Sequence record: PQ390715.1
Strand: one strand, 5' to 3'
DNA: 64,000 nt
The notes under the pieces: generated by a model
Seen by the model: the letters and a program-made list of their open reading frames with translations, nothing else
Told to the model about the DNA's origin: nothing
Database searches by the model: none
Shown here: positions 2,635 to 45,228 of the stretch, in pieces
Position numbering within the stretch: position 1 is the stretch's first letter
Layout of the letters: every line of letters starts with the position of its first letter
Made by a program: the position numbers and the translations under genes

Positions 2635-2665
2635 TGCATGTTCTCCTTGAGTTAATGAAACTATC

Positions 2666-2908: not shown

Positions 2909-2961
2909 TTTGTTTTCCCCGTGTTGGTATGTACATATAGTACTAAAACATTTGAGTACTG

Positions 2962-3216: not shown

Positions 3217-3278
3217 TTTAGTTTATCCTATAAAAAAGGCGGGAACTGATCCCGCCGTGTTGTTAGTACTGCAAGTTA

Positions 3279-3683: not shown

Positions 3684-3769
3684 CCTATTAGTTGAGATAG
3701 TACTACAAGTTAGAGTCTATTATAAAGTACTATCTGGGCAATGTCAAATAGTACTTTAAATGGATTCTA

Positions 3770-4093: not shown

Positions 4094-4178
4094 TTTTATT
4101 TCTCTCTCTTTGTTAGGAGGGGAACCATTCCCCCCTTGATGTAAACTATTATACAGTACTAAGATACTTTGTCAATAC

Positions 4179-4454
4179 TTAATTATTATAAATGTCGTGA
4201 ATAGTGATAAAGTTTTTACGACCGTAAACCTGCAAATCAATATCAATGTAGTGCTTATCAAGTACATCCTCGACGCTTAACGCGGTGTCGTGAATATCTT
4301 CGTAGAATTGAGGATCTACAATCTTGCTTAAGTCATCCGGCGTTAACTTATCGTTAAGCAGTTGAACCGCCTGGATATCTGCTTCACGTTTCCAGTCTTC
4401 CAGGTTAGTAGTCAGTACTTGTTCGATTTCGTTAGCTGTCAGTAGAATCCGCAT
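4179..4454 (-). CDS. Hypothetical early protein
   Basis: Own promoter and RBS. Confidence 0.75.
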   Translation of the reverse strand: MRILLTANEIEQVLTTNLEDWKREADIQAVQLLNDKLTPDDLSKIVDPQFYEDIHDTALSVEDVLDKHYIDIDLQVYGRKNFITIHDIYNN

Positions 4455-4523
4455 TTTAATGTTTCCTTATCAGGGGTTGATGTAAGTATTATACTCGTTT
4501 ACTTTCTATTGTCAAACTATTTT

Positions 4524-4631
4524 ATCAGGGGAGTTTTTCGTATGTCTTACTCCTGGACTACTTAACGGGGTTACTTGTTTCGTTCCCCGTCCTGATGTAA
4601 AACATTATACTTGATTCTAAGTACAATGCAA
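4524..4631 (-). ncRNA. Family B structured RNA, copy 1 (three-way junction, ~75 nt, with promoter)
   Basis: TTGCAT-16-TATAAT promoter; P1 ATCAGG/CCTGAT, P2 ACGGGG/CCCCGT, P3 GGAGT/ACTCC; no ORF; next promoter follows immediately. Confidence 0.65.
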
Positions 4632-4671
4632 GTACTTTTTTAAAAATAGTTTTCAGTACTATCCACCAGCA

Positions 4672-4751
4672 TATAATAGATACATTTATGCACCCTGTGG
4701 GCTGATTTGTTTCTATGCGTATATAATAGCAAAGGGACTGACCGGAGTCAA
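4672..4751 (-). ncRNA. Family A element, copy 2
   Basis: Promoter followed by CCCACAGGGTGCATAAATGTATCTAT. Confidence 0.55.
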
Positions 4752-5195
4752 TCCCTTTTTCAAATATTTTTAAACTTGTTTTGGGTTGCGATAGGTGATA
4801 GCGTTCGGGTACATTTGTTTAATGTTATTCCATGCCTGGTTAACATTGTAACCACTTGAGCGAATCAGTTGGTTACTACCGACACCTTGAAACACTACTT
4901 CGAATAAGAATTCTTTCATGCTTTCACCTCGCGATCTGCTTTACCTTTACGCCACGACATTACTAATTGTTCGCGTTGCCATAAGTCGAGTGATACAAAA
5001 AGTTTTGCGGTATCACTTTTAGGATACTCGCCATTAGTACCTAACCGATAAAACAGATCTTTCAGTACTGATAATTCTACTTGAATCATTTTATTACTCC
5101 TGATTGCGTTAATACTTCTACTATTGCATGAATGATCATAAGTACAGCTAAAACAATAATCATCGGATTCATTTGCATAAGCTGTACTCCTTATA

Positions 5196-5408
5196 TTAAT
5201 CTTTCAGCCAATGATCCTGAATGAATTTTTCGCCGGAACCTTGCTGCATTGATTGTAACAGACGTTCACGATGAGCGGCGGCGAATTGCTCAGTACTATG
5301 CGTTACGCCAGGCTGATAACGTGATACCCCATCCGGTCCGATGTATTGTACATCCCACGGTTTTTCGTTAGTATCAGACCATTTACGAACGATTAGTTGA
5401 CCTTGCAT
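5196..5408 (-). CDS. Hypothetical early protein
   Basis: Own promoter, leader hairpin and GAGGA RBS. Confidence 0.75.
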   Translation of the reverse strand: MQGQLIVRKWSDTNEKPWDVQYIGPDGVSRYQPGVTHSTEQFAAAHRERLLQSMQQGSGEKFIQDHWLKD

Positions 5409-5492
5409 TTTTCTTTCCTCTTAGTGGGGAGAATCATTTCTCCCCTTCATGTAACTTATTATACAGTACTATAATCTATTGTCAAATACTTT

Positions 5493-5681
5493 TTAAAGTT
5501 TATGAATCAATTCTTTATCTAAGCGATAGCGTACATTATTAATGGTAACAGCATTATTTTTAATGCTACGCTGTACAGGTCCACCAGCAATAACAAACGT
5601 TGCTTTATTACCCCGAACAATGATAGCACTTCCAGGATTACCGAAATCATCTTGTACTAAAATACTTGATAAGTTTTCCAT
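5493..5681 (-). CDS. Hypothetical early protein
   Basis: Leader hairpin and GAGGA RBS. Confidence 0.7.
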   Translation of the reverse strand: MENLSSILVQDDFGNPGSAIIVRGNKATFVIAGGPVQRSIKNNAVTINNVRYRLDKELIHKL

Positions 5682-5759
5682 TTTTATTTCCTCTTAGTAG
5701 GGGAAGATGTTTCCCCTTGATGTAAGTACTATAACAGTACTGAAAACTAAATGCAAGTA

Positions 5760-6116
5760 CTATGATAAAATCATGATAGGATATTCACTATCGATCAGTA
5801 CCTCGAATCCGAAACCTTCGTACCATTCTTTAAGATTAAAGGCGTTATCTTCTCCCGTATCGCATTCTAAAATGATACAATCTGAATCATCGGCGGCATC
5901 AATAAAGGCATTCATTAATTCGTTACCTTCACCATTGCCCCGACTATCAGGATCAACATAAAGAGAATCAATAAACGCTACACGGTCATAATCAAGATCC
6001 GGTGCAATGATTCCACGTTTAACAAACCAGTACTGCAATTGTGCTACTTTGCCCTGTACTTGATAGCCAGTGATCTCGCCATTGTCAGTAGTACGCGTGA
6101 TATGTTGTATTCCCAT
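5760..6116 (-). CDS. GNAT-family acetyltransferase
   Basis: IDSLYVDPDSRGNGEGNELM (motif A R/Q-x-x-G-x-G) and WYEGFGF (motif B). Confidence 0.85.
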   Translation of the reverse strand: MGIQHITRTTDNGEITGYQVQGKVAQLQYWFVKRGIIAPDLDYDRVAFIDSLYVDPDSRGNGEGNELMNAFIDAADDSDCIILECDTGEDNAFNLKEWYEGFGFEVLIDSEYPIMILS

Positions 6117-6179
6117 GATTTCAATCCTCAGTTAAGATATAAAATATTATAAACTATCTTTCAGTACTGTCAATACTTT

Positions 6180-6437
6180 TTATCTCATAGATCTATGCCA
6201 ACAATTACGCGGGGGACGTTTAAAAGTACTATCATGATCCTCCTGGCAAGTTATGCAGTACTTACATCCCTTAACGGCCTGGCGTCGATTCTCAGGGATT
6301 ATATCGCCGCAGTCGAGGCAATGTATCAGTGATTCTATTTGTGCGTTAATTTGCTTTCTAGCGTGGTTAACGGCGGCCTGAATCACTGCGTTAATCTCGT
6401 CTTGTTCGGCCCCATCTTTCGCGAATCCTACAGCCAT
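6180..6437 (-). CDS. TraR/DksA C4 zinc-finger protein (YbiI/TraR-like)
   Basis: GFAKDGAEQDEI N-terminus; CLDCGDIIPENRRQAVKGCKYCITCQ finger. Confidence 0.9.
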   Translation of the reverse strand: MAVGFAKDGAEQDEINAVIQAAVNHARKQINAQIESLIHCLDCGDIIPENRRQAVKGCKYCITCQEDHDSTFKRPPRNCWHRSMR

Positions 6438-6677
6438 TATTTTAACCTCATTATAAAAATACTATAGTACTGTAATGCGACAATAATATTACTTGTTCTT
6501 ACTTTTTCCAATCCACATGATACCACATATTCATCCCCATATGTGCGAAACGATACACCATGAAAATTTTTATACACTTGCACTACTAATCATAACCTTT
6601 CGTCTAACCAACTGCATAGAATTATACTACTTTACGCAAATTGATCAAGTATTGATCAGATCATTTTTTGATCAATA

Positions 6678-6764
6678 TTATACAGTTACATTTGTGCACC
6701 CTATGGGTTAGTGACGTTCTCGTCTTGATGTAAGTATTATGCCAGTACTTGATGATATTGTCAA
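6678..6764 (-). ncRNA. Family A element, copy 3
   Basis: TTGACA-17-CATAAT; hairpin GACG-AGAA-CGTC; CCCATAGGGTGCACAAATGTAACT. Confidence 0.55.
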
Positions 6765-6768
6765 TAGT

Positions 6769-6966
6769 TTATTTTAATTTTTTTCTGTCATTGATTAATG
6801 CTTTCAGTACTATACTAATGATTTGCAATGATTCATCAATGACTATAAAATTATTCTCTTTCATTAGATGATAGTTACCATTGATTGTATATTCTAAGGA
6901 GTACTGTTTACGTTTAATTTTTGATAATGTTTCTATTTGTTTTTGTACTGATTTCATGCTAATCAT
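6769..6966 (-). CDS. Hypothetical protein
   Basis: 65-aa ORF with RBS. Confidence 0.6.
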   Translation of the reverse strand: MISMKSVQKQIETLSKIKRKQYSLEYTINGNYHLMKENNFIVIDESLQIISIVLKALINDRKKLK

Positions 6967-7577
6967 TGTTAAACGTCCTGTAACGCATTCTAACGAGATA
7001 AACGGTTTAGTACTGGCATTGTATAGGGTAATGAATTAAAGCCCACCAGCGTTAACCAGTGGGCTATAATCTTACATCTTGCGGATAATCTTAACAGTAT
7101 CTTTCACCGATTTACCGTCTTGCTGGCATTGCTCGATCATTGCGTATTGTTCTGCTGTAAGATCCTCGCCAGTTTTTGCCAGTACTGCGTCGATGAATGA
7201 ATCCAGTGCGATCATTTTGTTTCTCTCTTAGGTTAAGTTAACTACTGTTTATAAAACTTATTATACAGTACTATCAAACGTTGTCAATATCTTTAATAGT
7301 ACTGGTAATATATTTTAGCGGTAATCGTCGTATGCTTTATTCACCTGGCGAATGTAACTTTCAAAGGCTTCGTCTACCGTTTCATACTCCCGAACATAAT
7401 CACCATAGGAAACTACATACATACCTTTTTGATCTTCAAACGTCATGATGATAGAATCCAGACCAACGATTTCAGTTTTTGCGATGATAGCCATTTTTTA
7501 ATTCCTTAGTAGTGTAGTTGATAAAACTTATTATGCCAGTACTATCAATCATTGTCAATAGTACTGTGATAATATTT

Positions 7578-7790
7578 TTAGTTAATGATAGTCAGTGTAA
7601 AATTGTAATCCCCTGCCTGGTATAGTACTTTGTCGCCGAACGTACCAACACGTTTCATATTGCAATAGATACCCATAACACTTTTTACATCTTTGATATT
7701 CCGAACGCCTGTGATATCCTTGTTGAAATTTTCATGATCAGAAAATAAAACTTGTTTTGCATTTTTCAGTACAGTGCAGATATTAGCCAT
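7578..7790 (-). CDS. Hypothetical early protein
   Basis: Own promoter and leader hairpin. Confidence 0.75.
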   Translation of the reverse strand: MANICTVLKNAKQVLFSDHENFNKDITGVRNIKDVKSVMGIYCNMKRVGTFGDKVLYQAGDYNFTLTIIN

Positions 7791-7884
7791 TTTGTTTTCT
7801 CTTTGTTAGTGGGGAGAACTATTCTCCCCTTGATGTAACTTATTATACAGTACTATAATCTATTGTCAAACTATTTTTTTTATA

Positions 7885-8226
7885 TTATTCGAAATCTTCT
7901 GGACCGGACTGATAATCATCTTCACCGTATGCACTTTCTAACCGCTCGCCAGTGTGATCATCAGTTAGTGAGTCATCCTCATAGTTCACGTCTACGCCCG
8001 TGATGTAAAACTGGCTATCGTCTGGATCATTGAAATTAATTTTCTGAATGTTTACAATAACGGTATTGATGCCCAGGACACCGCCATCAGCAGTTACAAA
8101 GTACTGATAGTTTTCACAACCGCCTGAATTGAAACCGTAATTAATTTCGGCCCGACCATCATTTAAACGCAGTGCCTGGGCGATGATTTCGTTTTCAAAG
8201 TTAGATTGAGCAATTGAGATAGTCAT
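7885..8226 (-). CDS. Hypothetical acidic early protein (start MTISIA)
   Basis: Own promoter, leader hairpin and AAGGA RBS. Confidence 0.75.
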   Translation of the reverse strand: MTISIAQSNFENEIIAQALRLNDGRAEINYGFNSGGCENYQYFVTADGGVLGINTVIVNIQKINFNDPDDSQFYITGVDVNYEDDSLTDDHTGERLESAYGEDDYQSGPEDFE

Positions 8227-8342
8227 GATTCGTTTCCTTATTACCAGGGGAAACCGTTTCCCCTCTCGATGTAAAACATTATACGCCAATTGAGATAGTT
8301 TGCAAGTACTTTTTAAAAATAGTTTTCAGTACTCAATACTTA

Positions 8343-8427
8343 TATAATAGATACACTTATGCACCCGGTGGGCTAGTGATCTATCTCTCAATGAATATAT
8401 AATAGCAAAATGGCTGACCGAAGTCAA
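8343..8427 (-). ncRNA. Family A element, copy 4
   Basis: Promoter within a UUCG terminator; CCCACCGGGTGCATAAGTGTATCTAT. Confidence 0.55.
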
Positions 8428-8440
8428 CCACTTTTTTCAT

Positions 8441-8575
8441 TTATTTTTTAGCTTTCAGTACTGCCGCCTTTCGCGTCATGCCTTGCTTAATGTACTCCTT
8501 TACTTTCGCTTTACGTGCTTTCGCTTTATCTGCTTTCGTTTTAGGAGTACTGTAAATTAAACCGTTAGGATTCAT
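8441..8575 (-). CDS. Small highly basic protein (44 aa, MNPNGLIYSTPKTKADKAKARKAKVK...)
   Basis: Manual translation; below the ORF-track cutoff; ends just before a terminator. Confidence 0.55.
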   Translation of the reverse strand: MNPNGLIYSTPKTKADKAKARKAKVKEYIKQGMTRKAAVLKAKK

Positions 8576-9112
8576 TTAAATCACCATAAAGAATAGATAG
8601 GTTACTAACAATGCCGCGATCAATGCACCGATCACCGCTGAACTGTAATAAGCTAATGATTTCATTTTTTAGCCTGGAAGTAATGTTTAATTTGTGCGGC
8701 GGTCAGTGCACAATTTCGCAGGAAGTTTTCTGTATAACTGCGGCGAGTACTGAAAGAGAATTGACCTTTGCCGTTGCCGATAGTAACATCAAACCGAGCG
8801 TTGTATTGTTTCATTTTGATTCTCCTTGTATCAGGGGAGAACCATTTCCCCCCTCTATGAAAACCATTATACAGTACTGAAAACTAATTGCAAGTACTAT
8901 TTTTTAGATTTACGCAAACTTTCTACCATCTCAGGAGTAAGGCCCGGCGGGTAGGAAACCACTTCATCAACGAAACGTAAAGGGAATACCCCAGCGAAAG
9001 GTGAACATGCTTTCTTGGTATTACTCTTTTTTGATGCTTTCATTTCATATTCCTTAATTAGTGGGGAGAATCATTTCTCCCCTTCATGTAAAACATTATA
9101 CGCGTTTAAAAA

Positions 9113-9322
9113 CTAATTGCAAGTATTATTTTCTAAAAAATGATTGTATGCTGCATCAACCACTCTTTCGATAACATACGCCAACGGCACGTATCCAACT
9201 ACATGACTACAATAGAAAGGACTGCGATTAGAATCATCGTATGCAAATACTTTACCAGGTACGGCATCAATCACATACATATTAACCTTTAAGATGTCGA
9301 TCTTATCCTGTACAGTAAGCAT
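9113..9322 (-). CDS. Hypothetical protein
   Basis: Co-oriented, tightly packed ORF. Confidence 0.65.
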   Translation of the reverse strand: MLTVQDKIDILKVNMYVIDAVPGKVFAYDDSNRSPFYCSHVVGYVPLAYVIERVVDAAYNHFLENNTCN

Positions 9323-9327
9323 ATTAA

Positions 9328-9597
9328 TTAACCTTTTAAGTACTGACTCAAATAGTCTTTTTGTTCTTCGGTGATTGGCGGCATCTTCCCTAGTACTGGA
9401 TTAATGATATAATCCCCCGTCACGTCCTGTGATGCGTTCTCAGTACTAGCAACCGGACGGATACGGGCCATCGCCTGGGCTTGTTCTACACTGTAACGCT
9501 CATAAAGGCGGCATTCTTCCGGTGTAGGAATTGCATCAATTCGTTTCATTGGTTTAATGATGCTTTCAACTTCATTCAGTACTTGATTAACGTTCAT
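9328..9597 (-). CDS. Hypothetical protein
   Basis: GAGGA RBS. Confidence 0.7.
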   Translation of the reverse strand: MNVNQVLNEVESIIKPMKRIDAIPTPEECRLYERYSVEQAQAMARIRPVASTENASQDVTGDYIINPVLGKMPPITEEQKDYLSQYLKG

Positions 9598-9648
9598 GGT
9601 ATAATCCTCAATATAAGCGGCCTAAATCAACCGCTAACGATGTTTTGA

Positions 9649-9918
9649 TTAATAGGTGTATGGTTGACGCTCAAACAATGATTGCACGTTGTACGCCCCG
9701 CTAATGGGCTTCGCTGGCAAATCAATTTTATATTGTTCACGCTTAAAGATAATAAAACGACAATTGTTCTTAACATCAAAATTGATTGAACGTTCCAGGA
9801 GTTTACCATTGTGCACAAATACAAGATAACCGCTCGCTACTTGTTTTGTAGTACTGGTTGCAACCATTGACCGCCGAACATGTGTACCTGCATCGATTAA
9901 AGTACTGATATTTTTCAT
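9649..9918 (-). CDS. Hypothetical early protein
   Basis: GAGGA RBS and upstream promoter-like element. Confidence 0.7.
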   Translation of the reverse strand: MKNISTLIDAGTHVRRSMVATSTTKQVASGYLVFVHNGKLLERSINFDVKNNCRFIIFKREQYKIDLPAKPISGAYNVQSLFERQPYTY

Positions 9919-9998
9919 TATACTATCCTCTTAATTTGATTTAATTTCTTTCCCCTATGCAGACACTATATCAAAGTATCTGCATAAAGTAAAGCTAA

Positions 9999-10343
9999 TT
10001 AAAGATCTTTTTTGCGTTTAACATCAGTTACCGAACTGTAAACAGTGATATTATTGTCACGACAAAAACGGGAAAGATAAGAACCGTGTAAAAACTCTTT
10101 ATCTTCCATATTAATAACCTTGCTAAATTCTTCCATTGCTACAGTGTCAAAGTGATCCTCGTATCCATATTTGAACGGCACGTTTACTACTTCAATAAAT
10201 TCGCCATTGATTTCTACGTCTACCGTTAAAGAGAAATAAGTGTTACCATATGAAGCCTGGAACCAACGCCGAGCGGCAATATGTACAACTTCAACAGAAG
10301 ACAGGTTGATGTTTTGTGCTGCGATAGTGTTGATGTTAGCCAT
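9999..10343 (-). CDS. Hypothetical early protein, paralogue of 3770..4093
   Basis: Shared motifs; own promoter. Confidence 0.85.
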   Translation of the reverse strand: MANINTIAAQNINLSSVEVVHIAARRWFQASYGNTYFSLTVDVEINGEFIEVVNVPFKYGYEDHFDTVAMEEFSKVINMEDKEFLHGSYLSRFCRDNNITVYSSVTDVKRKKDL

Positions 10344-10655
10344 TTTTTGTTTCCTCTTAGTTGTCTTGATAAAATCTATTATGCCAGTACTATCAATCTA
10401 TGTCAATAGTACTGTGATAATAATTTTACTTACTTTTTGCTTTCTTTACAGCTTCCACCTGGTCGGCCCACTCTTTACCCCATACTTGAGCATTATAGTG
10501 ATACTGACAAAGAGCAACGCCCCGTTTCAAACCAGTAATAGATTTTTTACCACATTGACAAGTTTTCATATTAGTTTCCTCATTATCAGGGAGAACCATT
10601 TCTCCCCTTGATGTAATGTATTATACTTTATCTGATTTACTTTGCAAGTACTTTT

Positions 10656-10883
10656 TTAATTTAATTCATCCAGGCAAAGGATACGATCTACACCCAAATC
10701 AGTTAAGCTAATAGACGGCACTTGATAGGTTTCAATGTATGCTACATCGGCCCACTGACCGAACTCACCTGCCGCCCAGTTATACATTGCAAAATGTAAT
10801 TCCGCACCTTTCTTATTAGTAATTACAGCAACAGTAGAAGAATTGCCAGTAGTACCAGATACGCGAGTGATTACGATAGCCAT
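10656..10883 (-). CDS. Hypothetical early protein (start MAIVIT)
   Basis: Own promoter and leader hairpin. Confidence 0.75.
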   Translation of the reverse strand: MAIVITRVSGTTGNSSTVAVITNKKGAELHFAMYNWAAGEFGQWADVAYIETYQVPSISLTDLGVDRILCLDELN

Positions 10884-11168
10884 TGTTTTGATTCCTTTGA
10901 TTTGGAAGGAGAACCGTTTCCCCCTCTCGATGTAAAACATTATACGCTAATCTCTTAATCGTGCAAGTACTTTTTATTACTTTTTGCAAAATACTTTAAA
11001 CGCACTCAATCGCATTCTAACGACTTTAACGCCACCAGCTAGGGCAATACATCAGATAAACAGTTTAATACGTTAGAATCGATTCTAGGCGGTGCTAGTG
11101 GACTGGAATACTATAGACACAAAAAAGCCCACTGTTTAAGGTGGGCTAGTGATTCAGTACTTTAATTG

Positions 11169-11651
11169 TTATGCTTCAACTTTGCGATGAGCTTCGATCC
11201 ATTCCTCGCGAGTCATACCACTGGAGTTAATCGCATCCAGTACTACCGCAATGCAGTTACCACGCACCGGAATCAGATATTCTTCCCCGTTATCAAGTAC
11301 TACCGCTACACGCTCTTGAATCCATTTTTTAGGCTTAGATTCCGGCTTATCTTCACCGTACTTTTTCGCCAGGGCTTTTTGTGCCATCTCTGTAACTACT
11401 TCCAGATCCAATCCAACTACTGCCGCTTGGATACTTTCAATTGTTGCTTGTAGTTCTGCTTCACGGGCCGCCTTCGCTGCTTCAATCTCTGCCGCTTTAT
11501 TTGCTTGTAGTTCTTTCGCAGTACTGTAAGCGATGTTAAAATTATTGCGTACCGCTTTCATGGTATCGTTATCCAGTTCAGCCAGGATCTCTGCCGCGAC
11601 GTTAGTTTCATTTGCTACCAGTGCTTTGATGAATGATTTTACATTAGCCAT
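11169..11651 (-). CDS. H-NS-like protein with a divergent DNA-binding motif
   Basis: N-terminal Ala/Glu coiled coil; C-terminal VLDNGEEYLIPVRGNCIAVVLDAINSSGMTREEWI aligns by eye with H-NS [35 protein letters not shown]. Confidence 0.6.
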   Translation of the reverse strand: MANVKSFIKALVANETNVAAEILAELDNDTMKAVRNNFNIAYSTAKELQANKAAEIEAAKAAREAELQATIESIQAAVVGLDLEVVTEMAQKALAKKYGEDKPESKPKKWIQERVAVVLDNGEEYLIPVRGNCIAVVLDAINSSGMTREEWIEAHRKVEA

Positions 11652-11713
11652 TTTATAAATCCTCAATTAAAGTTTAGTTTACGTTTATTAGTGTATCAAA
11701 GTTTTCTCGACGT

Positions 11714-11802
11714 GTCCAGTTTTTCGTTCGACTTACTGGCGGTCTACTTAGTGTTCCCCGTCTTGATGTAATACATTCTACGCCTTTTTGCGGTAATGTC
11801 AA
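11714..11802 (-). ncRNA. Family B RNA variant, in the leader of the H-NS-like gene
   Basis: TTGACA-16-TAGAAT; ACGGGGAAC..TAAGTAG..CCAGT-AAGTCGAACGAAAA-ACTGG (compensatory change versus GGAGT/ACTCC). Confidence 0.6.
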
Positions 11803-11884
11803 CTACTTTTTTAAAACTATTTTCAAAGTATCTCAGTACTACTGTACTACAAAAACAAAAAAGCCCACCAGGTGGGCTATGTAC

Positions 11885-12115
11885 TTAATCAGTAATTAAA
11901 ACATTAAACACTTTATCATTTAACGTTATGGGTGTACTGCTACCAGGCTTGAGATCAGTTAGTACACCTGCAATAGCTTTTTCATTGGCGACCTTTCCAG
12001 TGTCCAACAGTACTACAGTACTGATAAGATTAACGCTCGTTTCAATATCATAATGCACGGCGTTAAGTAGTTGTGTAGTACTGCTTTCGTTAAGTAAAAC
12101 AATTCGCTTAGTCAT
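11885..12115 (-). CDS. Hypothetical protein
   Basis: Followed by a terminator (CCCACCAGGTGGG). Confidence 0.7.
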   Translation of the reverse strand: MTKRIVLLNESSTTQLLNAVHYDIETSVNLISTVVLLDTGKVANEKAIAGVLTDLKPGSSTPITLNDKVFNVLITD

Positions 12116-12136
12116 GATGTTACCCCGTAGTATCTA

Positions 12137-12436
12137 TCAACGGCAATTAATAACGCCGGTATGAGTTACTTTCTCAGTATCCATAACAGTGACCGAACCG
12201 CGTTTAGTACTGGCATCATAATAAATTGTTGTGCTACCGTTTTCGTCTTCTTCATGGAACGGGCCGTTTTTAAATGCTTCCGGCTGGATCTCTAAATCCT
12301 TTAATACAATCTCGCCAGTTCTTTCATCGGTCATTGCAACAGTGCACTGAATGAATTTATCACCAGGTACATCTAACGACGCATTAACAGCGAAAGAGGA
12401 AACAGATAAAGCCAGGGCGATGATTGCAATTTTCAT
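12137..12436 (-). CDS. Putative secreted/periplasmic protein
   Basis: Signal-peptide-like MKIAIIALALSVSSFAVNA. Confidence 0.7.
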   Translation of the reverse strand: MKIAIIALALSVSSFAVNASLDVPGDKFIQCTVAMTDERTGEIVLKDLEIQPEAFKNGPFHEEDENGSTTIYYDASTKRGSVTVMDTEKVTHTGVINCR

Positions 12437-12520
12437 TTGATTATCCTTAGTTACCAGGGGGAACCGCTCCCCCTTGCGATGTAAAATATTATACAGTACT
12501 AAAAACTAATTGCAAGTACT

Positions 12521-12757
12521 TTATGATTTTTTATAAAACATTTCAGCAGTGATATTTTTACCCGTTGGTTGTACTTTATCCAGAATTTTTTGATGTCCAG
12601 GCCGTCCAAATGAATAAGATCCGTAAACAGTAAACCAGTAGTTACCCTCAGTGTTTACATGTACAGCACAATAGGGAACGCCCCGCGATTCATCACTAGT
12701 AAAGTGTGATACCGTACCCGTTACATTCGCAGACGTTGATTTGATTTGTTCGACCAT
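12521..12757 (-). CDS. Hypothetical early protein
   Basis: Own promoter and leader hairpin. Confidence 0.75.
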   Translation of the reverse strand: MVEQIKSTSANVTGTVSHFTSDESRGVPYCAVHVNTEGNYWFTVYGSYSFGRPGHQKILDKVQPTGKNITAEMFYKKS

Positions 12758-12865
12758 TTTCTTATTCCTTAGTTACCAGGGGAACCGCTCCCCCTATGCA
12801 AAACATTATACGCGTTTAAAAACTAATAGCAAGTATTTTAATAAAAAGTATTTGGAAAATAATTG

Positions 12866-12950
12866 TTGACAAGTGCATCCAGTACTGGCATAATTACTAC
12901 ATCAAGACGAAACAGTCACTAACCCACCGGGTGCCGAGATCCGTCTATTA
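12866..12950 (+). ncRNA. Family A element, copy 5 (opposite orientation)
   Basis: TTGACA-17-CATAAT; GAC-GAAACA-GTC; CCCACCGGGTGCC. Confidence 0.55.
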
Positions 12951-12999
12951 AATGATTCAGTACTAAAAAAAGAAAGGGGATCAATTGATCCCCTCGTTG

Positions 13000-13221
13000 T
13001 TATTTTGTAAGGTATAAACAGAAGTCACCTTTATTTGCTACGCCGCCAGTGTAACGCGAGGAATAGTTAGAAACGTCCTGGACTTCTGCTATTACCAGGG
13101 TATCATCATTCAATTCGTCGCAGAAGCAAACGGCTGGATCTTGTACGCCGATATTGTCGGCATGTTCCCGCATAGATTTAACCAGTGCTTCAAGTTGGGA
13201 AAGAGTAGTGATATTAGCCAT
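13000..13221 (-). CDS. Hypothetical early protein
   Basis: Own promoter, leader hairpin, terminator at 12975-12994. Confidence 0.75.
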   Translation of the reverse strand: MANITTLSQLEALVKSMREHADNIGVQDPAVCFCDELNDDTLVIAEVQDVSNYSSRYTGGVANKGDFCLYLTK

Positions 13222-13304
13222 TTTATTTTCCTCATTACCAGGGAGAACCATTTCTCCCCTTGATGTAAACTATTATACAGTACTAAAAACTAATTGCAAG
13301 TACT

Positions 13305-13586
13305 TTAACTGTAAGATCCGCAACGGTCGCAGTAGTGCCCCTCGTCATCGTCAACGAATTGACCAACGAAATTATCTACTTTCGCTTTCAGGTTATTATA
13401 ATCGTTTTCTACTTCATTTAAACGCTTCTGGTAGTATTCCAGTGCTTTAAGATATGCCGCATCAGCAGTTTTCTCCTGCATAGCTAAATTCATGCCACGC
13501 GTTTCATCGTACAGCCAAAAACCATCGGTGCACTGGCTAATAGATAATGACTTGCTTAGTACTGTATAGTTAATTACTTTACTCAT
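13305..13586 (-). CDS. Hypothetical early protein (start MSKVIN)
   Basis: Leader hairpin and GAGGG RBS; C-terminal CDRC. Confidence 0.75.
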   Translation of the reverse strand: MSKVINYTVLSKSLSISQCTDGFWLYDETRGMNLAMQEKTADAAYLKALEYYQKRLNEVENDYNNLKAKVDNFVGQFVDDDEGHYCDRCGSYS

Positions 13587-13644
13587 TAGATAAACCCTCA
13601 ATAAAGGCGGGAACCATTCCCCGCCATTGTTACAGTACTGAATA

Positions 13645-13884
13645 TTACATTCCAACCATTGCAGCACGGATCGCAGTAGTGCTATACTTAAAGCCGTCCG
13701 GCGTTGTAGTAGTACCGTTGGCTTTTAATCTGCGGTACATGCATTCCGCTGCAATATCTTTAGTTCTACTTTGTGCGATACAACTTTGTGCAAGCCGATA
13801 CAATGACTCACCGTTATTAATCCATAAGGAAACATTCCAATGAGTTTTGTTTTTGTGCCCGTTGTAAGTTTTAGTACTAGCCAT
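13645..13884 (-). CDS. Conserved phage protein (YNG...W.VSLWINN type), paralogue of 15686..15925
   Basis: Near-identical HKNKTHWNVSLWINN and TPDGFKYSTTAIRAAMVGM. Confidence 0.85.
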   Translation of the reverse strand: MASTKTYNGHKNKTHWNVSLWINNGESLYRLAQSCIAQSRTKDIAAECMYRRLKANGTTTTPDGFKYSTTAIRAAMVGM

Positions 13885-13976
13885 TTTTTTTAATCCTCGT
13901 TTGAGCGGGGAACCACTCCCCGCCTCGATATAAAGTATTATACGCCTTTAAACTTAGTTTGCAAGTACTTTTTAAA

Positions 13977-14588
13977 TTAATATTCGATTGATTCTACTAC
14001 GCCATCAATAACATTGAATTGATATTCGTTACCCTCAATCAGTGCTGTAATGTTTTCAGTAGTGAATTGATCCTCATATGCATTCTCTAAATCACGGTAC
14101 AACTTGCGGGATAATTCACGAATAGTTTCAGTGAGTAGTTCCTCAAGCTCATTAACTAACGTTTCTTGTTTTGCGGTTAAATCAGTGTAAGCCGATTCAA
14201 TGTACCCGCTTACAGTGTTTTCATGCGAGTAGTGGGAGTGAGAACGCTTTACACTCATCGCCAAATCATCTTCATTCAGCAGGTGACGGATTGAGCGATA
14301 CTTAGTTAATGCTCTTACCTTGCGTAAAAACTTCACTGCGTCAACGTGGTCAGTACTGATTGATGCACCGTCACCCTGGGACCAAAAACCACTGAATTGT
14401 ATTTCAGCGTCATTAATGCCATATTCCGGCAATACTGTTTCTTTATAGTGTTCAATTTCACTTTCAGAAAAATAATCGTCGTTTGAGTTTTTTTCACGTT
14501 CCCGAACCAGTTCGATAGCTGACGTTTTTTGTTCTGCGTTCAATTCAGAAAAATCCATAACGAAAGTAGTAGTAGTGATAGTTTTCAT
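13977..14588 (-). CDS. FSGFWSQGDGA-motif protein (family often annotated as TA antitoxin-like)
   Basis: TTT.V..F.EL..EQK..A N-terminus and IQFSGFWSQGDGAS motif; annotation from recall. Confidence 0.55.
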   Translation of the reverse strand: MKTITTTTFVMDFSELNAEQKTSAIELVREREKNSNDDYFSESEIEHYKETVLPEYGINDAEIQFSGFWSQGDGASISTDHVDAVKFLRKVRALTKYRSIRHLLNEDDLAMSVKRSHSHYSHENTVSGYIESAYTDLTAKQETLVNELEELLTETIRELSRKLYRDLENAYEDQFTTENITALIEGNEYQFNVIDGVVESIEY

Positions 14589-14656
14589 TTTGTAACTCTC
14601 ATTCAGTAGTTGATGTAAGTATTATACGCTTTTAAAAACATTTGTCAAACTATTTT

Positions 14657-14766
14657 ATCAGGGGAGTTTTTCGTGTGCCTTACTCCTGGGCTACTTAACG
14701 GGGAGTTACTTATTTCGTTCCCCGTCCTGATGTAAAACATTATACGCCTTTAAACATAGTTTGCAA
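14657..14766 (-). ncRNA. Family B structured RNA, copy 3
   Basis: Near-identical to 4524-4631, with changes confined to loops and linkers. Confidence 0.65.
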
Positions 14767-14811
14767 GTACTTTTTAAAAATAGTTTTCAGTACTGAATAT
14801 TAAAAAAAGTA

Positions 14812-14890
14812 TTGACAGCATTATCAAGTACTGGCATAATATACCCCATGACAACAGCTAACCCACCGGGTGCACAATTGTAACTATACT
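14812..14890 (+). ncRNA. Family A element, copy 6
   Basis: TTGACA-17-CATAAT; CCCACCGGGTGCACAATTGTAACTAT; converges on copy 7. Confidence 0.55.
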
Positions 14891-14899
14891 AAACTACTT

Positions 14900-14984
14900 T
14901 TTCTATAGATACACTCCCGCACCCTATGGGCTACGGCTTATCTGCCAATGAATACATTATGCCAGTACTGACAAAATAAGTCAA
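14900..14984 (-). ncRNA. Family A element, copy 7
   Basis: TTGACT-17-CATAAT; GGC-AGATAA-GCC; CCCATAGGGTGCGGGAGTGTATCTAT. Confidence 0.55.
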
Positions 14985-15014
14985 TACCGGCAATTGTAAA
15001 GATTTGTAAACTGC

Positions 15015-15245
15015 TTATACTGCAATCGCGTCCAGGCTATAATAATAATAAGTGCCGTATTGGTGTACTTTATTACCTTTTATTTCAGTACTGAATGAAT
15101 CCGAACGGTTTGCATATGATGTTAATTTAAAGTACTTTGATTTGCTGATACGTTGCCATACACCGCAGATCCGCTGTAAGTAAGTAGTTTTATTAGTGGT
15201 AGTATCTTTTACGGTTTTAACTTCAGTCATATACATATTAGTCAT
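15015..15245 (-). CDS. Hypothetical early protein
   Basis: Own promoter and GGAG RBS. Confidence 0.75.
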   Translation of the reverse strand: MTNMYMTEVKTVKDTTTNKTTYLQRICGVWQRISKSKYFKLTSYANRSDSFSTEIKGNKVHQYGTYYYYSLDAIAV

Positions 15246-15332
15246 TTTTATTACTCCAGGTTATAGGCGGGAAGTGTTCCCGCTCTCGATGTAAAACATT
15301 ATACTCCATTAAACATAGTTTGCAAGTACTTT

Positions 15333-15599
15333 TTATTCAAGTACTGCAATCTTTTTAGTACTGTACACAGTAACGCGGTTGCCCTTGCGGTCGTGCTTTA
15401 TTTCTACCACTCGACGCGATACACTATCGGGACTTTTTAACGCCGCTAACCAGTACTGTAATGATCTGGCTGTACTACGCTTTACAATGGCCCAACGTTT
15501 ACCACGTTCCGATTGTACGCCCATATCTTTAAACGTTGCCCCGTCCTGGCGTGCGGCGATCCGAGCTTGTTCACGCGTCGCAAAATACTTAATATTCAT
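15333..15599 (-). CDS. Paralogue of 3279..3683 (start MNIKYF)
   Basis: Shared motifs. Confidence 0.8.
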   Translation of the reverse strand: MNIKYFATREQARIAARQDGATFKDMGVQSERGKRWAIVKRSTARSLQYWLAALKSPDSVSRRVVEIKHDRKGNRVTVYSTKKIAVLE

Positions 15600-15685
15600 G
15601 CTGTTGCCCTTATCGTTGGTGTATGAATAAAACACTATTATAAAGTACTATCGCAAAAAAATGATAGTACTTTAAATAAATTCTA

Positions 15686-15925
15686 TTACATTCCAACCAT
15701 TGCCGCACGGATCGCAGTAGTGCTATATTTGAATCCGTCCGGTGTTTTATCTTGTCCAGTCTGTTCTAAAAATAACATCATATGACGGGCCGCATCATTG
15801 CGATTAGTGCTATCGTTAATAAAGTCCTGGGCCAACCGGTATAATGATTCATCGTTATTAATCCAAAGGCTTACATTCCAATGAGTTTTGTTTTTGTGAC
15901 CTAAGAACATTTTTGATTTAGCCAT
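15686..15925 (-). CDS. Paralogue of 13645..13884
   Basis: Shared motifs; own promoter and leader. Confidence 0.85.
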   Translation of the reverse strand: MAKSKMFLGHKNKTHWNVSLWINNDESLYRLAQDFINDSTNRNDAARHMMLFLEQTGQDKTPDGFKYSTTAIRAAMVGM

Positions 15926-16017
15926 TTTTTAATCCTCTTATATAGTGGGGAACTATTCCCCACCTGATAGAAAGTATTATACTTGTTTTAACTTAGTATG
16001 CAAGTACTTTATTAAAC

Positions 16018-16380
16018 TTATTCGTAAATTTTGCCACTGTCAGCCCATACCAGGAAACGAGGCATATTATCCCATGCATCTTGTTTTAAATTTAAACCGT
16101 GTAATACTTCTGTACTTTCCATTCCTGGTACTGGTTTACTATACACCGCGAACAATTCGCCCATGTACTGATAAGCCATCGTTAAATCACTGGCGATCAT
16201 CTTATGGATCATCGCATCAAGCATCACGGTTGCGGCGTATTGTTCACGCTTAAGCGGTAACATTGCAATAAGTTCCCGATAAGCTGAAATGTGAATCTTT
16301 ACCGTTTCAGCCGGAAGACCTTTCATCTCTTCACGGAAGTTAACCAGGTTAGCAATAATTTTAGTGATTTGAGTCGCCAT
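16018..16380 (-). CDS. Hypothetical early protein (start MATQIT)
   Basis: Own promoter and leader. Confidence 0.75.
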   Translation of the reverse strand: MATQITKIIANLVNFREEMKGLPAETVKIHISAYRELIAMLPLKREQYAATVMLDAMIHKMIASDLTMAYQYMGELFAVYSKPVPGMESTEVLHGLNLKQDAWDNMPRFLVWADSGKIYE

Positions 16381-16509
16381 CGTTTTAATCTCTCGTAATG
16401 TGTAGCAGGAAGTGTTCCCGCTCTCGATGTAAAACATTATACGCTTTTTTCAGTACGGTGCAAGTACTTTCTACAAATACTTTTTAAAATAGTTTTCTTT
16501 CTATATAGG

Positions 16510-16601
16510 AGTACTATTATTCAGTACTATTATTCAGTACTATCATTCAGTACTGCAACCATCCAGGGGAACTATCTTTCTATATAGGGGAACTATCTTT
16601 C
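16510..16601. repeat. 4 x 13-bp AGTACTATYATTC tandem repeat plus 2 x GGGGAACTATCTTTC
   Basis: AGTACT at 16510, 16523, 16536, 16549; direct repeats at 16566 and 16587. Confidence 0.9.
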
Positions 16602-16766
16602 AGTACTGAATCAACCAAATCACTACTACACCCCATAAAACGGCCTCAGACGCATTCTAACGCATTAATACACCTAAGCTATACATTTGCACCATTCCAA
16701 TCATTCCAGGGCTTTACGGGCCGTTTAAACGCGTTAAATTATTTTCAATTATTTTGTTTTTAGGTA

Positions 16767-17066
16767 TTGACTTGATCCTGAAAAAGCGTATAATTACTAC
16801 ATAGACGCGAGAAAGCGGAAACCCCAGAGGGTGCGGAATTACGCCCAAAATTCAAGATATAAAAAAAGGATACACTCCCGCACCCTAGCAGGTAAACGCA
16901 CTTTCTCAGTACTGAAATATAGTACCATAGTCCGGCCCAGGATGGCAAGCAAATTAATTAAAACTTTTTTCATCCAGGGTATTGCTTTATTTTTCCAGTA
17001 CTGTATAATAGTTCCATCAAGTCGAGAAAGACTCAAGCCCACCGGGTGCATAGTTACGCCCAAAAT
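16767..17066. ncRNA. Family A elements, copies 8-10 (16767+, ~16869-16948-, 16982+)
   Basis: Promoters with CGC-GAGAAA-GCG and AGTC-GAGAAA-GACT hairpins and a GGGTGC core; the two + copies share TTACGCCCAAAATTCA. Confidence 0.5.
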
Positions 17067-17599
17067 TCAGTACTGAAAAAATTTTTAAAAATATCCGGCC
17101 AGGTCGTTGACATTGCCCCCAGTTTATAAGATAATGATTCCAGATTCAGAAAAATCTAACTACAGATACTGCGGGGAAACTATCCCCACGCGGTAGGGGA
17201 ACTATTGGAAAAACAAAATAAAATTTTGATTTAGCCGTCTATACTTCCAGCCATCCAGAAATCTAGCCGTTTAGCCGTCTAGATGGATAGCCATCTTTAC
17301 TTCCAGACTTCTGGAGGGCTAGACATATCTACGTCCAAAATCCATCCAGGGTAACTACACCCAAAATCCGTCAGTACTATACCATAGATCTATCTTTTGA
17401 AAGGGAGTATTCAGTACTGCCATCATAGCCCTCACTATGTTACCCTAGGAGGATGAAGACTATCATGTAGTACTGAATACTGTTAGAGGGAATCCACCAG
17501 CTTGTGCTGGTGGCATAATGCTTTAGATTAAAATCAGTACTGACACCATTCTGTTAATATCAGTACTGTTATTACAATTTTCATATGAGGTTCAAAAAG

Positions 17600-17725
17600 A
17601 TGTACCACCACAGGAGGAACTATCTTTTCTGTACTGTCTCACGACAGGAGGTAGAGTAAATGAATTGTTCGCAGCAACTCATCTCTCTATGTAGAACATT
17701 ATACAGTACTGAATCATAATGTCAA
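17600..17725 (-). ncRNA. Candidate ORF-less structured RNA with its own promoter
   Basis: TTGACA-16-TATAAT; ATGAGTTG/CAATTCAT stem; CTGTC-GTGA-GACAG GNRA hairpin. Confidence 0.45.
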
Positions 17726-18002
17726 TAACTTTCTTTCACCATTCAGTACTGATATTCTTGAGAACTACCCGTCTACAAACATCATTATATCCCACAAATC
17801 ATAAACGTCCCAACGTAAATTTCAACTTTCGAAGATCCAACTTTTATTTCATAGGTACTCCAAAATTTTTAGGATCGAGATTTAGGATGGAGTACTAACC
17901 AACTTTTTGCTGGAGCCTCAAGGGGTAATTGAATTTTACCCCGAAGGGTAAAAGGGTAATTGTAATTAAGGTGAAAGTAATAATTCAGTACTAATCATTG
18001 CG

Positions 18003-45227: not shown

Positions 45228-45228
45228 A

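What the first reader, a model, noticed from the sequence alone, without database searches (positions are those of the whole stretch)
11169..11651. Phage H-NS-like protein with a rewritten AT-hook, preceded by the family B RNA
Seen: N-terminal coiled coil, basic linker (KPESKPKK) and a C-terminal segment alignable to the H-NS DNA-binding domain. The conserved TWTGQGR(T/M)P is replaced by LIPVRGNCI. Established: H-NS silences AT-rich foreign DNA, and phages encode antagonists (T7 gp5.5, T4 Arn, LUZ24 Mip). Inference: a dominant-negative H-NS mimic or a re-targeted nucleoid protein, possibly reading AGTACT sites.
Basis: partly seen in the sequence, partly recalled or inferred. Interest (0 to 1): 0.65.

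Follow-up and report, generated by a model that had tools for sequence, protein, structure and literature searches.

The report
Divergent H-NS-like protein of jumbo coliphage
A giant E. coli phage makes, early in infection, a small protein built like the bacterial gene-silencer H-NS, but its DNA-reading loop is a mix of the H-NS and Pseudomonas MvaT versions, so it probably binds or competes for AT-rich DNA.

Summary
The ORF is real: window 11169-11651, minus strand, 160 aa. It has its own sigma-70-type promoter, Shine-Dalgarno site and terminator, and dN/dS is 0.18 against the 121Q-type orthologue. The window is an Asteriusvirus jumbo coliphage, 100% identical to SHEFM2K.

No Pfam, NCBIfam or PDB sequence search names the protein. 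Several independent lines still point to H-NS:
- BLASTP and hhalign align residues 71-154 colinearly with H-NS 58-136, scoring above all 150 shuffles.
- An AlphaFold model of residues 104-160 gives a beta-beta-alpha-alpha fold. Its best PDB matches are the H-NS C-domains (Foldseek ranks 1 and 2) and the MvaT C-domain-DNA complex (VIA-align rank 1 of 48,161).
- The Klebsiella-phage orthologue nearly reaches the Pfam H-NS N-domain cut-off. GenBank already notes an HHpred hit to StpA for it.

Gly-Asn is invariant across the family and matches the MvaT loop that enters the minor groove.

The C-domain is acidic and lacks the helix lysines, so DNA binding is inferred, not shown. Dominant-negative action and AGTACT reading are untested. 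In related phages the gene sits in the ~20-kb terminal repeat. Verdict: a new, uncharacterised variant of a known kind (phage-encoded H-NS-family protein).

The parts
11775..11802 (-). sigma-70-type early promoter (TTGACA, 16-nt spacer, TAGAAT; 11 of 12 matches)
   Evidence: It belongs to the repeated early-promoter cassette of the region (families D1, D4, D8).
11652..11768 (-). about 117-nt 5' leader; 11683-11768 is a diverged copy of the repeated 'family B' leader element
   Evidence: Alignment with the copies at 4518-4600 and 14652-14735. Folding energy z = +0.31. No Rfam family.
11660..11664 (-). Shine-Dalgarno GAGGA, 8 nt before the ATG
   Evidence: read from the sequence
11169..11651 (-). 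CDS, 160 aa plus stop (P0001); PHROG 27871
   Evidence: dN/dS 0.18
11358..11651 (-). N-terminal helical domain, residues 1-98: helices 2-12, 16-23, 28-77, an invariant G80-x-D82 turn, helix 83-98. Presumed oligomerisation domain.
   Evidence: AF2 model. hhalign aligns the GLDLE turn with H-NS GIDPNE. Orthologue P0030 scores 21.5 bits on PF22470.
11313..11357 (-). flexible Lys-rich linker, residues 99-113
   Evidence: pLDDT about 52; net charge +1
11172..11312 (-). C-terminal H-NS/MvaT-fold domain, residues 114-160 (beta-beta-alpha-alpha)
   Evidence: AF2 domain model. Foldseek ranks 1 and 2 are the H-NS C-domains 2L93 and 1HNR. VIA-align rank 1 is the MvaT C-domain-DNA complex 2MXF, Z 3.6. hhalign.
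11256..11264 (-). codons of R130-G131-N132, the loop opposite Q112-G113-R114 of H-NS. G131 and N132 are invariant in the family.
   Evidence: MvaT G99/N100 role from PMC4466236
11126..11147 (-). intrinsic terminator (7-bp stem, T run) 22 nt after the stop codon

Best explanation
The gene encodes a full-length but highly divergent member of the H-NS superfamily of nucleoid-associated, xenogeneic-silencer-type proteins. The family is specific to RaK2-like jumbo phages (Asteriusvirus, Alcyoneusvirus, Munch-like and metagenomic relatives).

Shown:
- It is a conserved, selected, monocistronic gene with a strong host-type promoter.
- It has a helical N-terminal domain, a flexible Lys-containing linker and a C-terminal domain predicted to adopt the H-NS/MvaT DNA-binding fold.
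- The loop that carries Q/R-G-R in H-NS carries x-G-N here (R-G-N in this phage).

Inferred:
- The N-terminal domain makes dimers or higher oligomers.
- The protein therefore coats or bridges AT-rich DNA soon after injection. The phage genome is 31-39% G+C in this window, against a much GC-richer host.
- The likely result is either competition with host H-NS/StpA on the incoming phage DNA, or organisation and silencing of DNA for the phage's own programme.
For: 1. Sequence. BLASTP against E. coli H-NS gives one colinear C-terminal alignment. hhalign of the family profile against an H-NS/StpA profile aligns residues 71-154 with H-NS 58-136 over 77 columns, P 3.4e-4. In my own run the score was 26.5, against 11.6 +/- 2.1 (maximum 23.6) for 150 column shuffles and 17.0 for the reversed profile. 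The C-domain alone scored 20.8 against 10.0 +/- 2.1 (maximum 18.9).

2. Structure. The AF2 domain model has pLDDT 80. Foldseek over 350,542 PDB chains ranks Salmonella H-NS C-domain 2L93 first (TM 0.42/0.46, rmsd 3.0 over 38 columns), 1HNR second and Ler 2LEV thirteenth. VIA-align over 48,161 chains ranks the MvaT C-domain-DNA complex 2MXF first (Z 3.6, rmsd 2.8, 44 of 47 residues) and Ler third. Only 10 chains reach Z >= 2.

3. N-terminal domain. The family member P0030 aligns with P0001 over its full length (E 8.6e-10). It scores E 2.1e-4 and 21.5 bits on PF22470 Histone_HNS_N, whose cut-off is 24.5. Its 92%-identical orthologue in phage Muenster carries the GenBank note 'HHpred hit to NP_417155.1 97.2%', and NP_417155.1 is StpA. 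The ESM Atlas feature search puts an H-NS_N cluster second, at score 0.75, which is a lead only.

4. Conservation. G80, V117, G122, G131 and N132 are invariant across 15 members down to 29% identity. dN/dS of the linker plus C-domain (residues 99-160) is 0.13.

5. Published structure work. In MvaT only Gly99 and Asn100 of loop 2 enter the minor groove, and N100 superimposes on H-NS R114 (PMC4466236).

6. Context. The gene has a strong sigma-70 promoter and its own terminator. In vB_Ec-M-J and Muenster it lies about 6-7 kb into the annotated ~20-kb direct terminal repeat. In fEgEco12 the match at 6069-6548 falls inside the 20,993-bp repeat reported in PMC13070987. Contigs from RNA libraries of three studies cover the gene, with gaps at the promoter and terminator spacers.
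Against: - No curated model reaches significance for this protein. PF00816 and PF22470 give no hit at E <= 10, NCBIfam gives nothing, and a PDB sequence or profile search finds no H-NS, StpA, Ler or MvaT.
- The fold-search scores are weak in absolute terms (Foldseek E 0.9-1.3; Z 3.6), as expected for a 47-residue domain. The argument rests on rank, and on a model built from only 10-15 sequences.
- The N-terminal 1-78 shows no significant profile similarity to the H-NS N-domain: score 11.6, against shuffles of 8.7 +/- 1.6 with a maximum of 13.2. Fold searches of the whole model return only generic helices.
- The C-domain is acidic (net -4, pI 4.7) and the linker is only +1, against 0 and +4 in H-NS.
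- The helix after the loop has no lysine in this clade. Leu138 stands where distant relatives have Lys and H-NS has K120.
- No DNA-binding, oligomerisation or H-NS-interaction test could be run.
Confidence: 0.6

Rival explanations
1. Anti-silencer or decoy. The protein keeps the H-NS architecture but binds DNA poorly. It co-assembles with host H-NS/StpA through the site-2-like helix-turn-helix and caps or poisons their filaments on the AT-rich phage DNA. This would be dominant-negative action in the manner of H-NST.
For: - The C-domain is acidic and the linker only weakly basic.
- The Q/RGR motif and the helix lysines are lost.
- The segment most similar to H-NS includes the turn of dimerisation site 2, GLDLE against GIDPNE.
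- The gene is immediate-early and lies in the terminal repeat.
- The phage DNA is 31-39% G+C, an H-NS target.
Against: - The C-domain is the most constrained part. dN/dS of the linker plus C-domain is 0.13, and G122, G131 and N132 are invariant. A pure oligomerisation decoy would not need this; the known decoy H-NST shares only the N-terminal domain with H-NS (PMC7074111).
- There is no detectable similarity to H-NS dimerisation site 1.
- No interaction test was possible.
Confidence: 0.2
2. Not an H-NS relative. A small beta-hairpin plus two helices arose independently, and the protein has another role, such as a protein adaptor or an RNA-binding protein. The sequence similarity would be chance plus compositional bias.
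For: All curated sequence models fail for this protein. Structural scores are low in absolute terms. The AF2 alignment is shallow.
Against: - Two different aligners independently put H-NS-family C-domains first out of 350,542 and 48,161 chains.
- hhalign exceeds every shuffle and is colinear across the turn, linker and domain.
- An orthologue nearly reaches the PF22470 cut-off and has an external HHpred hit to StpA at 97.2%.
Confidence: 0.12
3. Sequence-specific reader of the hyper-abundant palindrome AGTACT, marking phage DNA as self.
For: - AGTACT occurs 288 times in the window, against 21.6 +/- 5.5 expected.
- It is 13-29 times enriched in every family-bearing locus tested except the most distant one.
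- AGTACT has a central TpA step, the kind of step MvaT prefers (PMC4466236).
Against: - Co-occurrence is confounded by common descent of these phages.
- Known H-NS-fold domains read minor-groove shape with low sequence specificity (PMC4466236).
- L011 carries a family member without any enrichment.
- Earlier notes report the same enrichment in an unrelated prophage family (I did not verify this). The exhaustive protein search found no homologue outside jumbo-phage-like contigs.
Confidence: 0.06

Closest known systems
H-NS / StpA of Enterobacteriaceae (Pfam PF22470 + PF00816)
   Same: - Same order of parts: four N-terminal helices with a G-x-D turn between the long helix and helix 4, a flexible Lys-containing linker, and a C-terminal beta-beta-alpha-alpha domain of the same length.
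- Ungapped alignment from beta-1 to the last helix. The acidic DNGE turn, Gly131 (H-NS G113), the Gly before the last helix and the aromatic residue of the last helix are conserved.
   Different: - No Pfam hit for this protein.
- TWTGQGRTP is replaced by LIPVRGNCI: Trp109 and Pro116 are lost and R114 becomes Asn.
- The K120/K121 equivalents are Leu and Asp.
- The C-domain has net charge -4 and the linker +1, against 0 and +4.
- Dimerisation site 1 is not detectably similar.
- It is encoded by a lytic jumbo phage.
MvaT/MvaU of Pseudomonas (C-domain-DNA complex 2MXF; 'AT-pincer')
   Same: It is the best structural match of the C-domain: Z 3.6, rmsd 2.8, 44 of 47 residues. The invariant Gly-Asn at the loop tip matches MvaT G99-N100, the only loop residues that enter the minor groove.
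   Different: - The loop has H-NS length, whereas MvaT's is two residues shorter (PMC4466236).
- Arg130 sits directly before Gly-Asn, where MvaT has Gly.
- No residue is clearly equivalent to the pincer Arg80.
- The lysine network (K81, K83, K97, K102, K105, K108) is mostly absent in this clade.
Horizontally acquired xenogeneic-silencer homologues (phage EPV1 H-NS, plasmid Sfh/Pmr/Acr2, Hfp, H-NST, Ler, prophage CgpS/Lsr2-like)
   Same: It is an H-NS-family protein carried by a mobile element with AT-rich DNA, presumably to interact with host silencing (review PMC7074111).
   Different: - Those homologues are recognisable by ordinary sequence search, and the EPV1 copy is close to its host's hns.
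- This family is far diverged and restricted to RaK2-like jumbo phages.
- In related phages it lies in the ~20-kb direct terminal repeat.
- It has an R/x-G-N loop.
Klebsiella phage Muenster CPT_Muenster_011 / K64-1 gp430 ('putative DNA-binding protein')
   Same: They are orthologues: same family, same position near the left genome end, 34-37% identity to this protein. The GenBank note records HHpred 97.2% to StpA.
   Different: - The Alcyoneusvirus branch has a five-residue Lys-rich insertion after Gly-Asn.
- Its N-domain lies closer to PF22470.
- Neither paper read here (Muenster PMC8407769; Asteriusvirus fEgEco12 PMC13070987) mentions H-NS or StpA.

Membership tests
H-NS family (Pfam Histone_HNS PF00816 / Histone_HNS_N PF22470) | C-terminal domain matches PF00816 above the gathering score | tested here: not met
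   No PF00816 hit at E <= 10 for P0001. None of the 15 family members hits it at E <= 1. There is no match in the six frames of the nearest whole phage genome.
H-NS family (Pfam Histone_HNS PF00816 / Histone_HNS_N PF22470) | C-terminal beta-beta-alpha-(3-10/alpha) DNA-binding fold | tested here: met
   Met on a predicted model only. E114-118, E124-128, H135-144, H148-155. Top PDB matches are 2L93, 1HNR, 2MXF and 2LEV.
H-NS family (Pfam Histone_HNS PF00816 / Histone_HNS_N PF22470) | [quoted passage not shown] | tested here: not met
   The aligned segment is LIPVRGNCI. Only the central Gly is kept, and Arg stands at the Q/R position. The motif definition is from PMC4466236.
H-NS family (Pfam Histone_HNS PF00816 / Histone_HNS_N PF22470) | N-terminal oligomerisation domain (PF22470; dimerisation sites 1 and 2) | tested here: inconclusive
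   - P0001 has no hit.
- Orthologue P0030 scores 21.5 bits against a cut-off of 24.5, E 2.1e-4.
- The site-2 turn is aligned by hhalign, but site 1 is not significant.
- AF2 gives a four-helix layout.
- External HHpred note: 97.2% to StpA.
H-NS family (Pfam Histone_HNS PF00816 / Histone_HNS_N PF22470) | Positively charged flexible linker | tested here: inconclusive
   The linker is flexible (pLDDT about 52) and holds four Lys, but its net charge is +1 against +4 in H-NS.
H-NS family (Pfam Histone_HNS PF00816 / Histone_HNS_N PF22470) | Self-association and binding or silencing of AT-rich DNA | not testable with these tools
The rest needs bench assays.
MvaT-like silencers | Gly-Asn at the tip of loop 2, inserting into the minor groove | tested here: met
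   Met at sequence level. G131-N132 are invariant in all 15 members. N132 aligns with H-NS R114, which superimposes on MvaT N100 (PMC4466236). Insertion into DNA was not tested.
MvaT-like silencers | Loop 2 two residues shorter than in H-NS; conserved VIETKGGNH | tested here: not met
   The alignment with H-NS from beta-2 through the helix is ungapped. The sequence is YLIPVRGNC.
MvaT-like silencers | Pincer Arg80 and the lysine network (K81, K83, K97, K102, K105, K108) | tested here: not met
   There is no lysine in the helix after the loop in this clade; distant relatives keep one. The nearly invariant R114 does not have the Arg80-to-Gly99 spacing. This last point is my own count from the alignments, an inference.

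The most novel reading that the evidence does not exclude
This early H-NS-like protein is the unidentified reader of the AGTACT palindrome that saturates RaK2-like jumbo phage genomes. Its R-G-N loop would recognise the central TpA step, and oligomers nucleated about every 220-340 bp would coat phage DNA selectively. That would give the phage a private chromatin that excludes host H-NS or host defences.
Probability: 0.06. Interest if true: 0.85.

Novelty: new variant of a known kind. Interest (0 to 1): 0.45.

Why it matters
H-NS silences AT-rich incoming DNA, and these 350-kb phages are about 15 percentage points lower in G+C than their hosts. A phage-encoded, immediate-early H-NS-like protein carried in the terminal repeat is a plausible answer to how such genomes escape or exploit silencing.

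The protein also shows a third solution for the DNA-reading loop of this fold. It has the H-NS loop length, an Arg as in Lsr2 and Bv3F, and Gly-Asn as in MvaT. That makes the rules of minor-groove recognition in this superfamily testable by a natural variant.

It also gives a name and a hypothesis to PHROG 27871, which is annotated 'hypothetical' in nearly all of the 52 phage genomes that hold it.

Tried and rejected
- **Sequence libraries.** Pfam, NCBIfam and PHROGs gave nothing functional. phmmer and hmmsearch against PDB sequences gave no H-NS-family hit.
- **Whole-model fold searches.** Foldseek pdb, VIA wide and pdb_via returned only generic long-helix matches and said nothing about the N-domain. 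The BFVD search found only unnamed phage relatives.
- **N-domain profile.** hhalign of the N-domain alone against the H-NS N-domain was not significant.
- **ESM Atlas.** The C-terminal part gave no usable hit.
- **Complex prediction.** No oligomer or H-NS heteromer test exists, and nothing can be said either way.
- **Locus searches.** With A1 it found only the 121Q-type contig.
- **Upstream RNA.** Rfam on 10400-12600 gave only sub-threshold Trp_leader hits lying on the two terminators. The 5' leader folds no better than shuffles, so I reject a structured RNA specific to this gene's leader.
- **Neighbouring genes.** None of the eight neighbours has a Pfam family.
- **Literature.** Searches found no paper on an H-NS- or StpA-like protein in these jumbo phages.

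Full report
**Where the window comes from.** Window 10600-12200 is 100% identical to Escherichia phage SHEFM2K (348 kb). It is 92-96% identical to phAPEC6, SP27, vB_Ec-M-J and other 121Q/PBECO4-type jumbo coliphages of the genus Asteriusvirus. G+C across the window is 31-39%.

**The gene.**
- The ORF runs from 11651 to 11169 on the minus strand and encodes 160 aa.
- It forms a monocistronic unit. It has a TTGACA-16-TAGAAT promoter at 11802..11775, a roughly 117-nt leader, GAGGA 8 nt before the ATG, and a hairpin with a T run at 11147..11126.
- The promoter is one copy of an early-promoter cassette repeated more than 20 times on this strand.
- Against the 121Q-type orthologue (84% identity), dS is 0.58, dN is 0.10 and dN/dS is 0.18. 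Residues 1-98 give 0.19 and residues 99-160 give 0.13. It is a selected protein-coding gene.
- Contigs from RNA libraries of three studies (wastewater, soil and whole-organism metatranscriptomes) cover the gene. Depth falls to zero over the promoter spacer in one run and over the spacer beyond the terminator in another. This fits transcription as predicted, but contigs in RNA libraries do not prove it.

**Ordinary searches are silent.**
- Pfam has nothing above noise and no H-NS model at E <= 10. NCBIfam has nothing.
- PHROG 27871, of unknown function, matches at E 6e-79.
- No PDB chain matches by phmmer or by a family profile.
- The word search found only relatives at 71% identity or more.
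- The exhaustive phmmer search of 1.84 billion representatives found 13 proteins. Nine full-length members at 29-55% identity were taken into alignment A2.
- tblastn finds the family in 52 phage records: Asteriusvirus, the Klebsiella RaK2-like Alcyoneusvirus, and Munch-like Salmonella and Klebsiella jumbo phages.
- BFVD adds a Yersinia phage fHe-Yen9-03 protein.
- There is one copy in the unique sequence of the 121Q-type genome. One metagenomic relative has two tandem paralogues.

**Test of the H-NS claim by sequence.**
- BLASTP against E. coli H-NS returns one alignment: residues 114-152 against H-NS 96-134, 23% identity, pairwise E 0.028.
- In that register LIPVRGNCI (126-134) lies opposite TWTGQGRTP (108-116), and R130-G131-N132 lies opposite Q112-G113-R114.
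- Profile-profile comparison of the family (A2) with an H-NS/StpA alignment (A4) gives P 3.4e-4 over 77 columns. Residues 71-154 align with H-NS 58-136. The aligned region includes the G-L-D-L-E turn opposite G-I-D-P-N-E of H-NS dimerisation site 2, the linker and the whole C-domain.
- In my own run the score was 26.5. The 150 column shuffles gave 11.6 +/- 2.1 with a maximum of 23.6, and the reversed profile gave 17.0.
- The C-domain alone scored 20.8, against 10.0 +/- 2.1 with a maximum of 18.9.
- The N-terminal 78 residues alone are not significantly similar to the H-NS N-domain.

**Test by structure.**
- The whole-protein AF2 model (pLDDT 80) has helices 2-12, 16-23, 28-77 and 83-98, a low-confidence linker, then beta 114-118, beta 124-128, helix 135-144 and helix 148-155.
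- Fold searches with the whole model are swamped by the long helix.
- I therefore built a C-domain alignment from DNA references and folded residues 104-160 alone, with pLDDT 80.
- Foldseek against 350,542 PDB chains ranks the Salmonella H-NS C-domain 2L93 first, 1HNR second and Ler 2LEV thirteenth. E-values are 0.9-2, and TM is 0.42/0.46 for 2L93.
- VIA-align does not depend on Foldseek. Against 48,161 representative chains it ranks the MvaT C-domain-DNA complex 2MXF first (Z 3.6, rmsd 2.8 A, 44 of 47 residues; model 8-56 against chain 79-123) and Ler third (Z 2.4). Only ten chains reach Z >= 2.
- The absolute scores are low, as they must be for about 45 residues. Two aligners still put H-NS-family DNA-binding domains at the top of libraries in which such domains are a handful. 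I take the fold assignment as likely, conditional on the model being right.

**Evidence for the N-terminal half comes through an orthologue.**
- P0030 is the Alcyoneusvirus member. It aligns with this protein over its full length at E 8.6e-10.
- It scores E 2.1e-4 and 21.5 bits on Pfam Histone_HNS_N, whose cut-off is 24.5, over residues 18-70.
- Its 92%-identical copy in Klebsiella phage Muenster is annotated 'putative DNA-binding protein; HHpred hit to NP_417155.1 97.2% probability'. NP_417155.1 is StpA, the H-NS paralogue.
- K64-1 RefSeq calls its copy 'DNA-binding protein'.
- The ESM Atlas feature search lists an H-NS_N cluster second, at 0.75, which is only a lead.
- The relatedness to H-NS/StpA has therefore been seen before by annotators of a sister genus. 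Neither the Muenster announcement nor the fEgEco12 paper mentions it, and I found no study of it.

**The 'rewritten AT-hook'.**
- Across 15 members down to 29% identity, the invariant residues are G80, V117, G122, G131 and N132. R114 and G145 are nearly invariant.
- The loop is therefore x-G-N, with R-G-N in Asteriusvirus.
- Ding et al. 2015 (PMC4466236) define the canonical H-NS motif as TW(S/T)G(Q/R)GRTP and show that MvaT replaces it with VIETKGGNH.
- They show that only Gly99 and Asn100 of that loop enter the minor groove, that N100 superimposes on H-NS R114, and that N100A impairs binding and silencing.
- The phage loop is a hybrid. It has the H-NS length, since the alignment with H-NS is ungapped and MvaT's loop is two residues shorter. 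It has Arg at the Q/R position, as in the 'RGR' proteins, and Gly-Asn as in MvaT.
- This gives a concrete, testable mechanism: Gly131-Asn132, with Arg130, entering an AT-rich minor groove.

**Caveats on DNA binding.**
- The C-domain carries net charge -4 (pI 4.7) and the linker +1. H-NS has 0 and +4.
- The helix after the loop has no lysine in this clade. Leu138 stands where distant relatives have Lys and H-NS has K120.
- MvaT's lysine network and its pincer Arg80 have no clear equivalents.
- The Asteriusvirus protein may therefore bind DNA weakly, which keeps the decoy (dominant-negative) reading alive.
- Against a pure decoy, the C-domain is the most constrained part of the protein, and the known H-NS decoy H-NST shares only the N-terminal domain with H-NS (PMC7074111).
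Neither self-association nor binding to H-NS was tested.

**Genomic setting.**
- In vB_Ec-M-J the orthologue lies at 6853-7335 of a 21,525-bp direct terminal repeat.
- In Muenster it lies at 5709-6209 of a 20,030-bp repeat.
- In fEgEco12 the match lies at 6069-6548. PMC13070987 reports a 20,993-bp repeat there, confirmed by restriction digests.
- The gene is therefore present twice per packaged genome. If the left end enters first, it is among the first genes to enter the cell. That last step is an inference.

**The upstream 'family B' element.** The leader shares blocks with two longer copies at 4518-4600 and 14652-14735. About 17 columns that carry most of the first hairpin in those copies are missing here, and it has an insertion. 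It does not fold better than shuffles, z = +0.31, and matches no Rfam family. In the other two copies a second promoter follows the element. Whatever family B is, I see no sign that it is tied to this protein.

**AGTACT.**
- The word occurs 288 times in the window, against 21.6 +/- 5.5 expected.
- It is 13-29 times enriched in every locus that carries a family member, except the most distant one, L011.
- Earlier notes of this scan describe the same enrichment across the clade and call its reader unknown.
- Co-occurrence with this protein is confounded by common descent, and H-NS-fold domains are shape readers. I rate the 'AGTACT reader' idea at about 6%.

**Verdict.** I file it as a new, uncharacterised variant of a known kind: a phage-encoded H-NS-superfamily protein with an R/x-G-N loop. 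It is not a member of Pfam PF00816 by that family's own criteria.

Noticed in passing
whole window; also loci L005, L008-L010, L012, L095-L098, L100: The palindrome AGTACT occurs 288 times in 64 kb, against 21.6 +/- 5.5 expected. It is 13-29 times enriched in every contig that carries a relative of this protein, but not in L011 (ratio 1.0). Three copies lie inside this CDS (11239, 11296, 11520), one just after its stop (11156) and one upstream of its -35 hexamer (11835).
   Followed up: partly
window 14-17736, minus strand: More than 20 copies of one cassette: AGTACT, a TTGCAA/TTGACA -35 hexamer, a TATAAT -10 hexamer, ACATC, a short G-rich hairpin and a Shine-Dalgarno site. Each copy drives a small gene, so this is a dense field of monocistronic early units (repeat families D1, D3, D8, D16).
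   Followed up: partly
window 4518-4600 and 14652-14735, minus strand: The two full 'family B' elements are each transcribed from an early promoter and are followed by a second TTGACA-N17-TATAAT promoter before the next gene. They may therefore be short separate transcripts rather than leaders.
   Followed up: no
L098 (vB_Ec-M-J), L096 (Muenster); fEgEco12 via and PMC13070987: The whole early region that holds this gene lies inside the ~20-kb direct terminal repeat of related phages, so these genes are present twice per packaged genome. The SHEFM2K record is written as circular, without the repeat.
   Followed up: partly
L005 698-1291 and 2047-2640; L005, L006, L009, L100: One metagenomic relative carries two tandem paralogues of the H-NS-like gene (61% identity). 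In the Munch-like branch an 86-aa DksA/TraR-type zinc-finger gene lies one to two genes downstream of the H-NS-like gene.
   Followed up: no
window 13977-14588, minus strand: A 203-aa ORF lies upstream of this gene. In phage Muenster the CDS at 3055-3666, which is 612 nt (about 203 aa), is annotated 'YeeU-like antitoxin'. Pfam gives no hit at E <= 0.001 for the window's protein. Orthology was not checked.
   Followed up: no
window 8380-8436 and 42167-55998: About nine copies of a conserved hairpin, GGCTGACCGAAGTCAACC with a T run, follow TATAAT-like boxes (repeat families D14, D15, D17). It looks like a second shared terminator or regulatory cassette, in a different part of the window.
   Followed up: no
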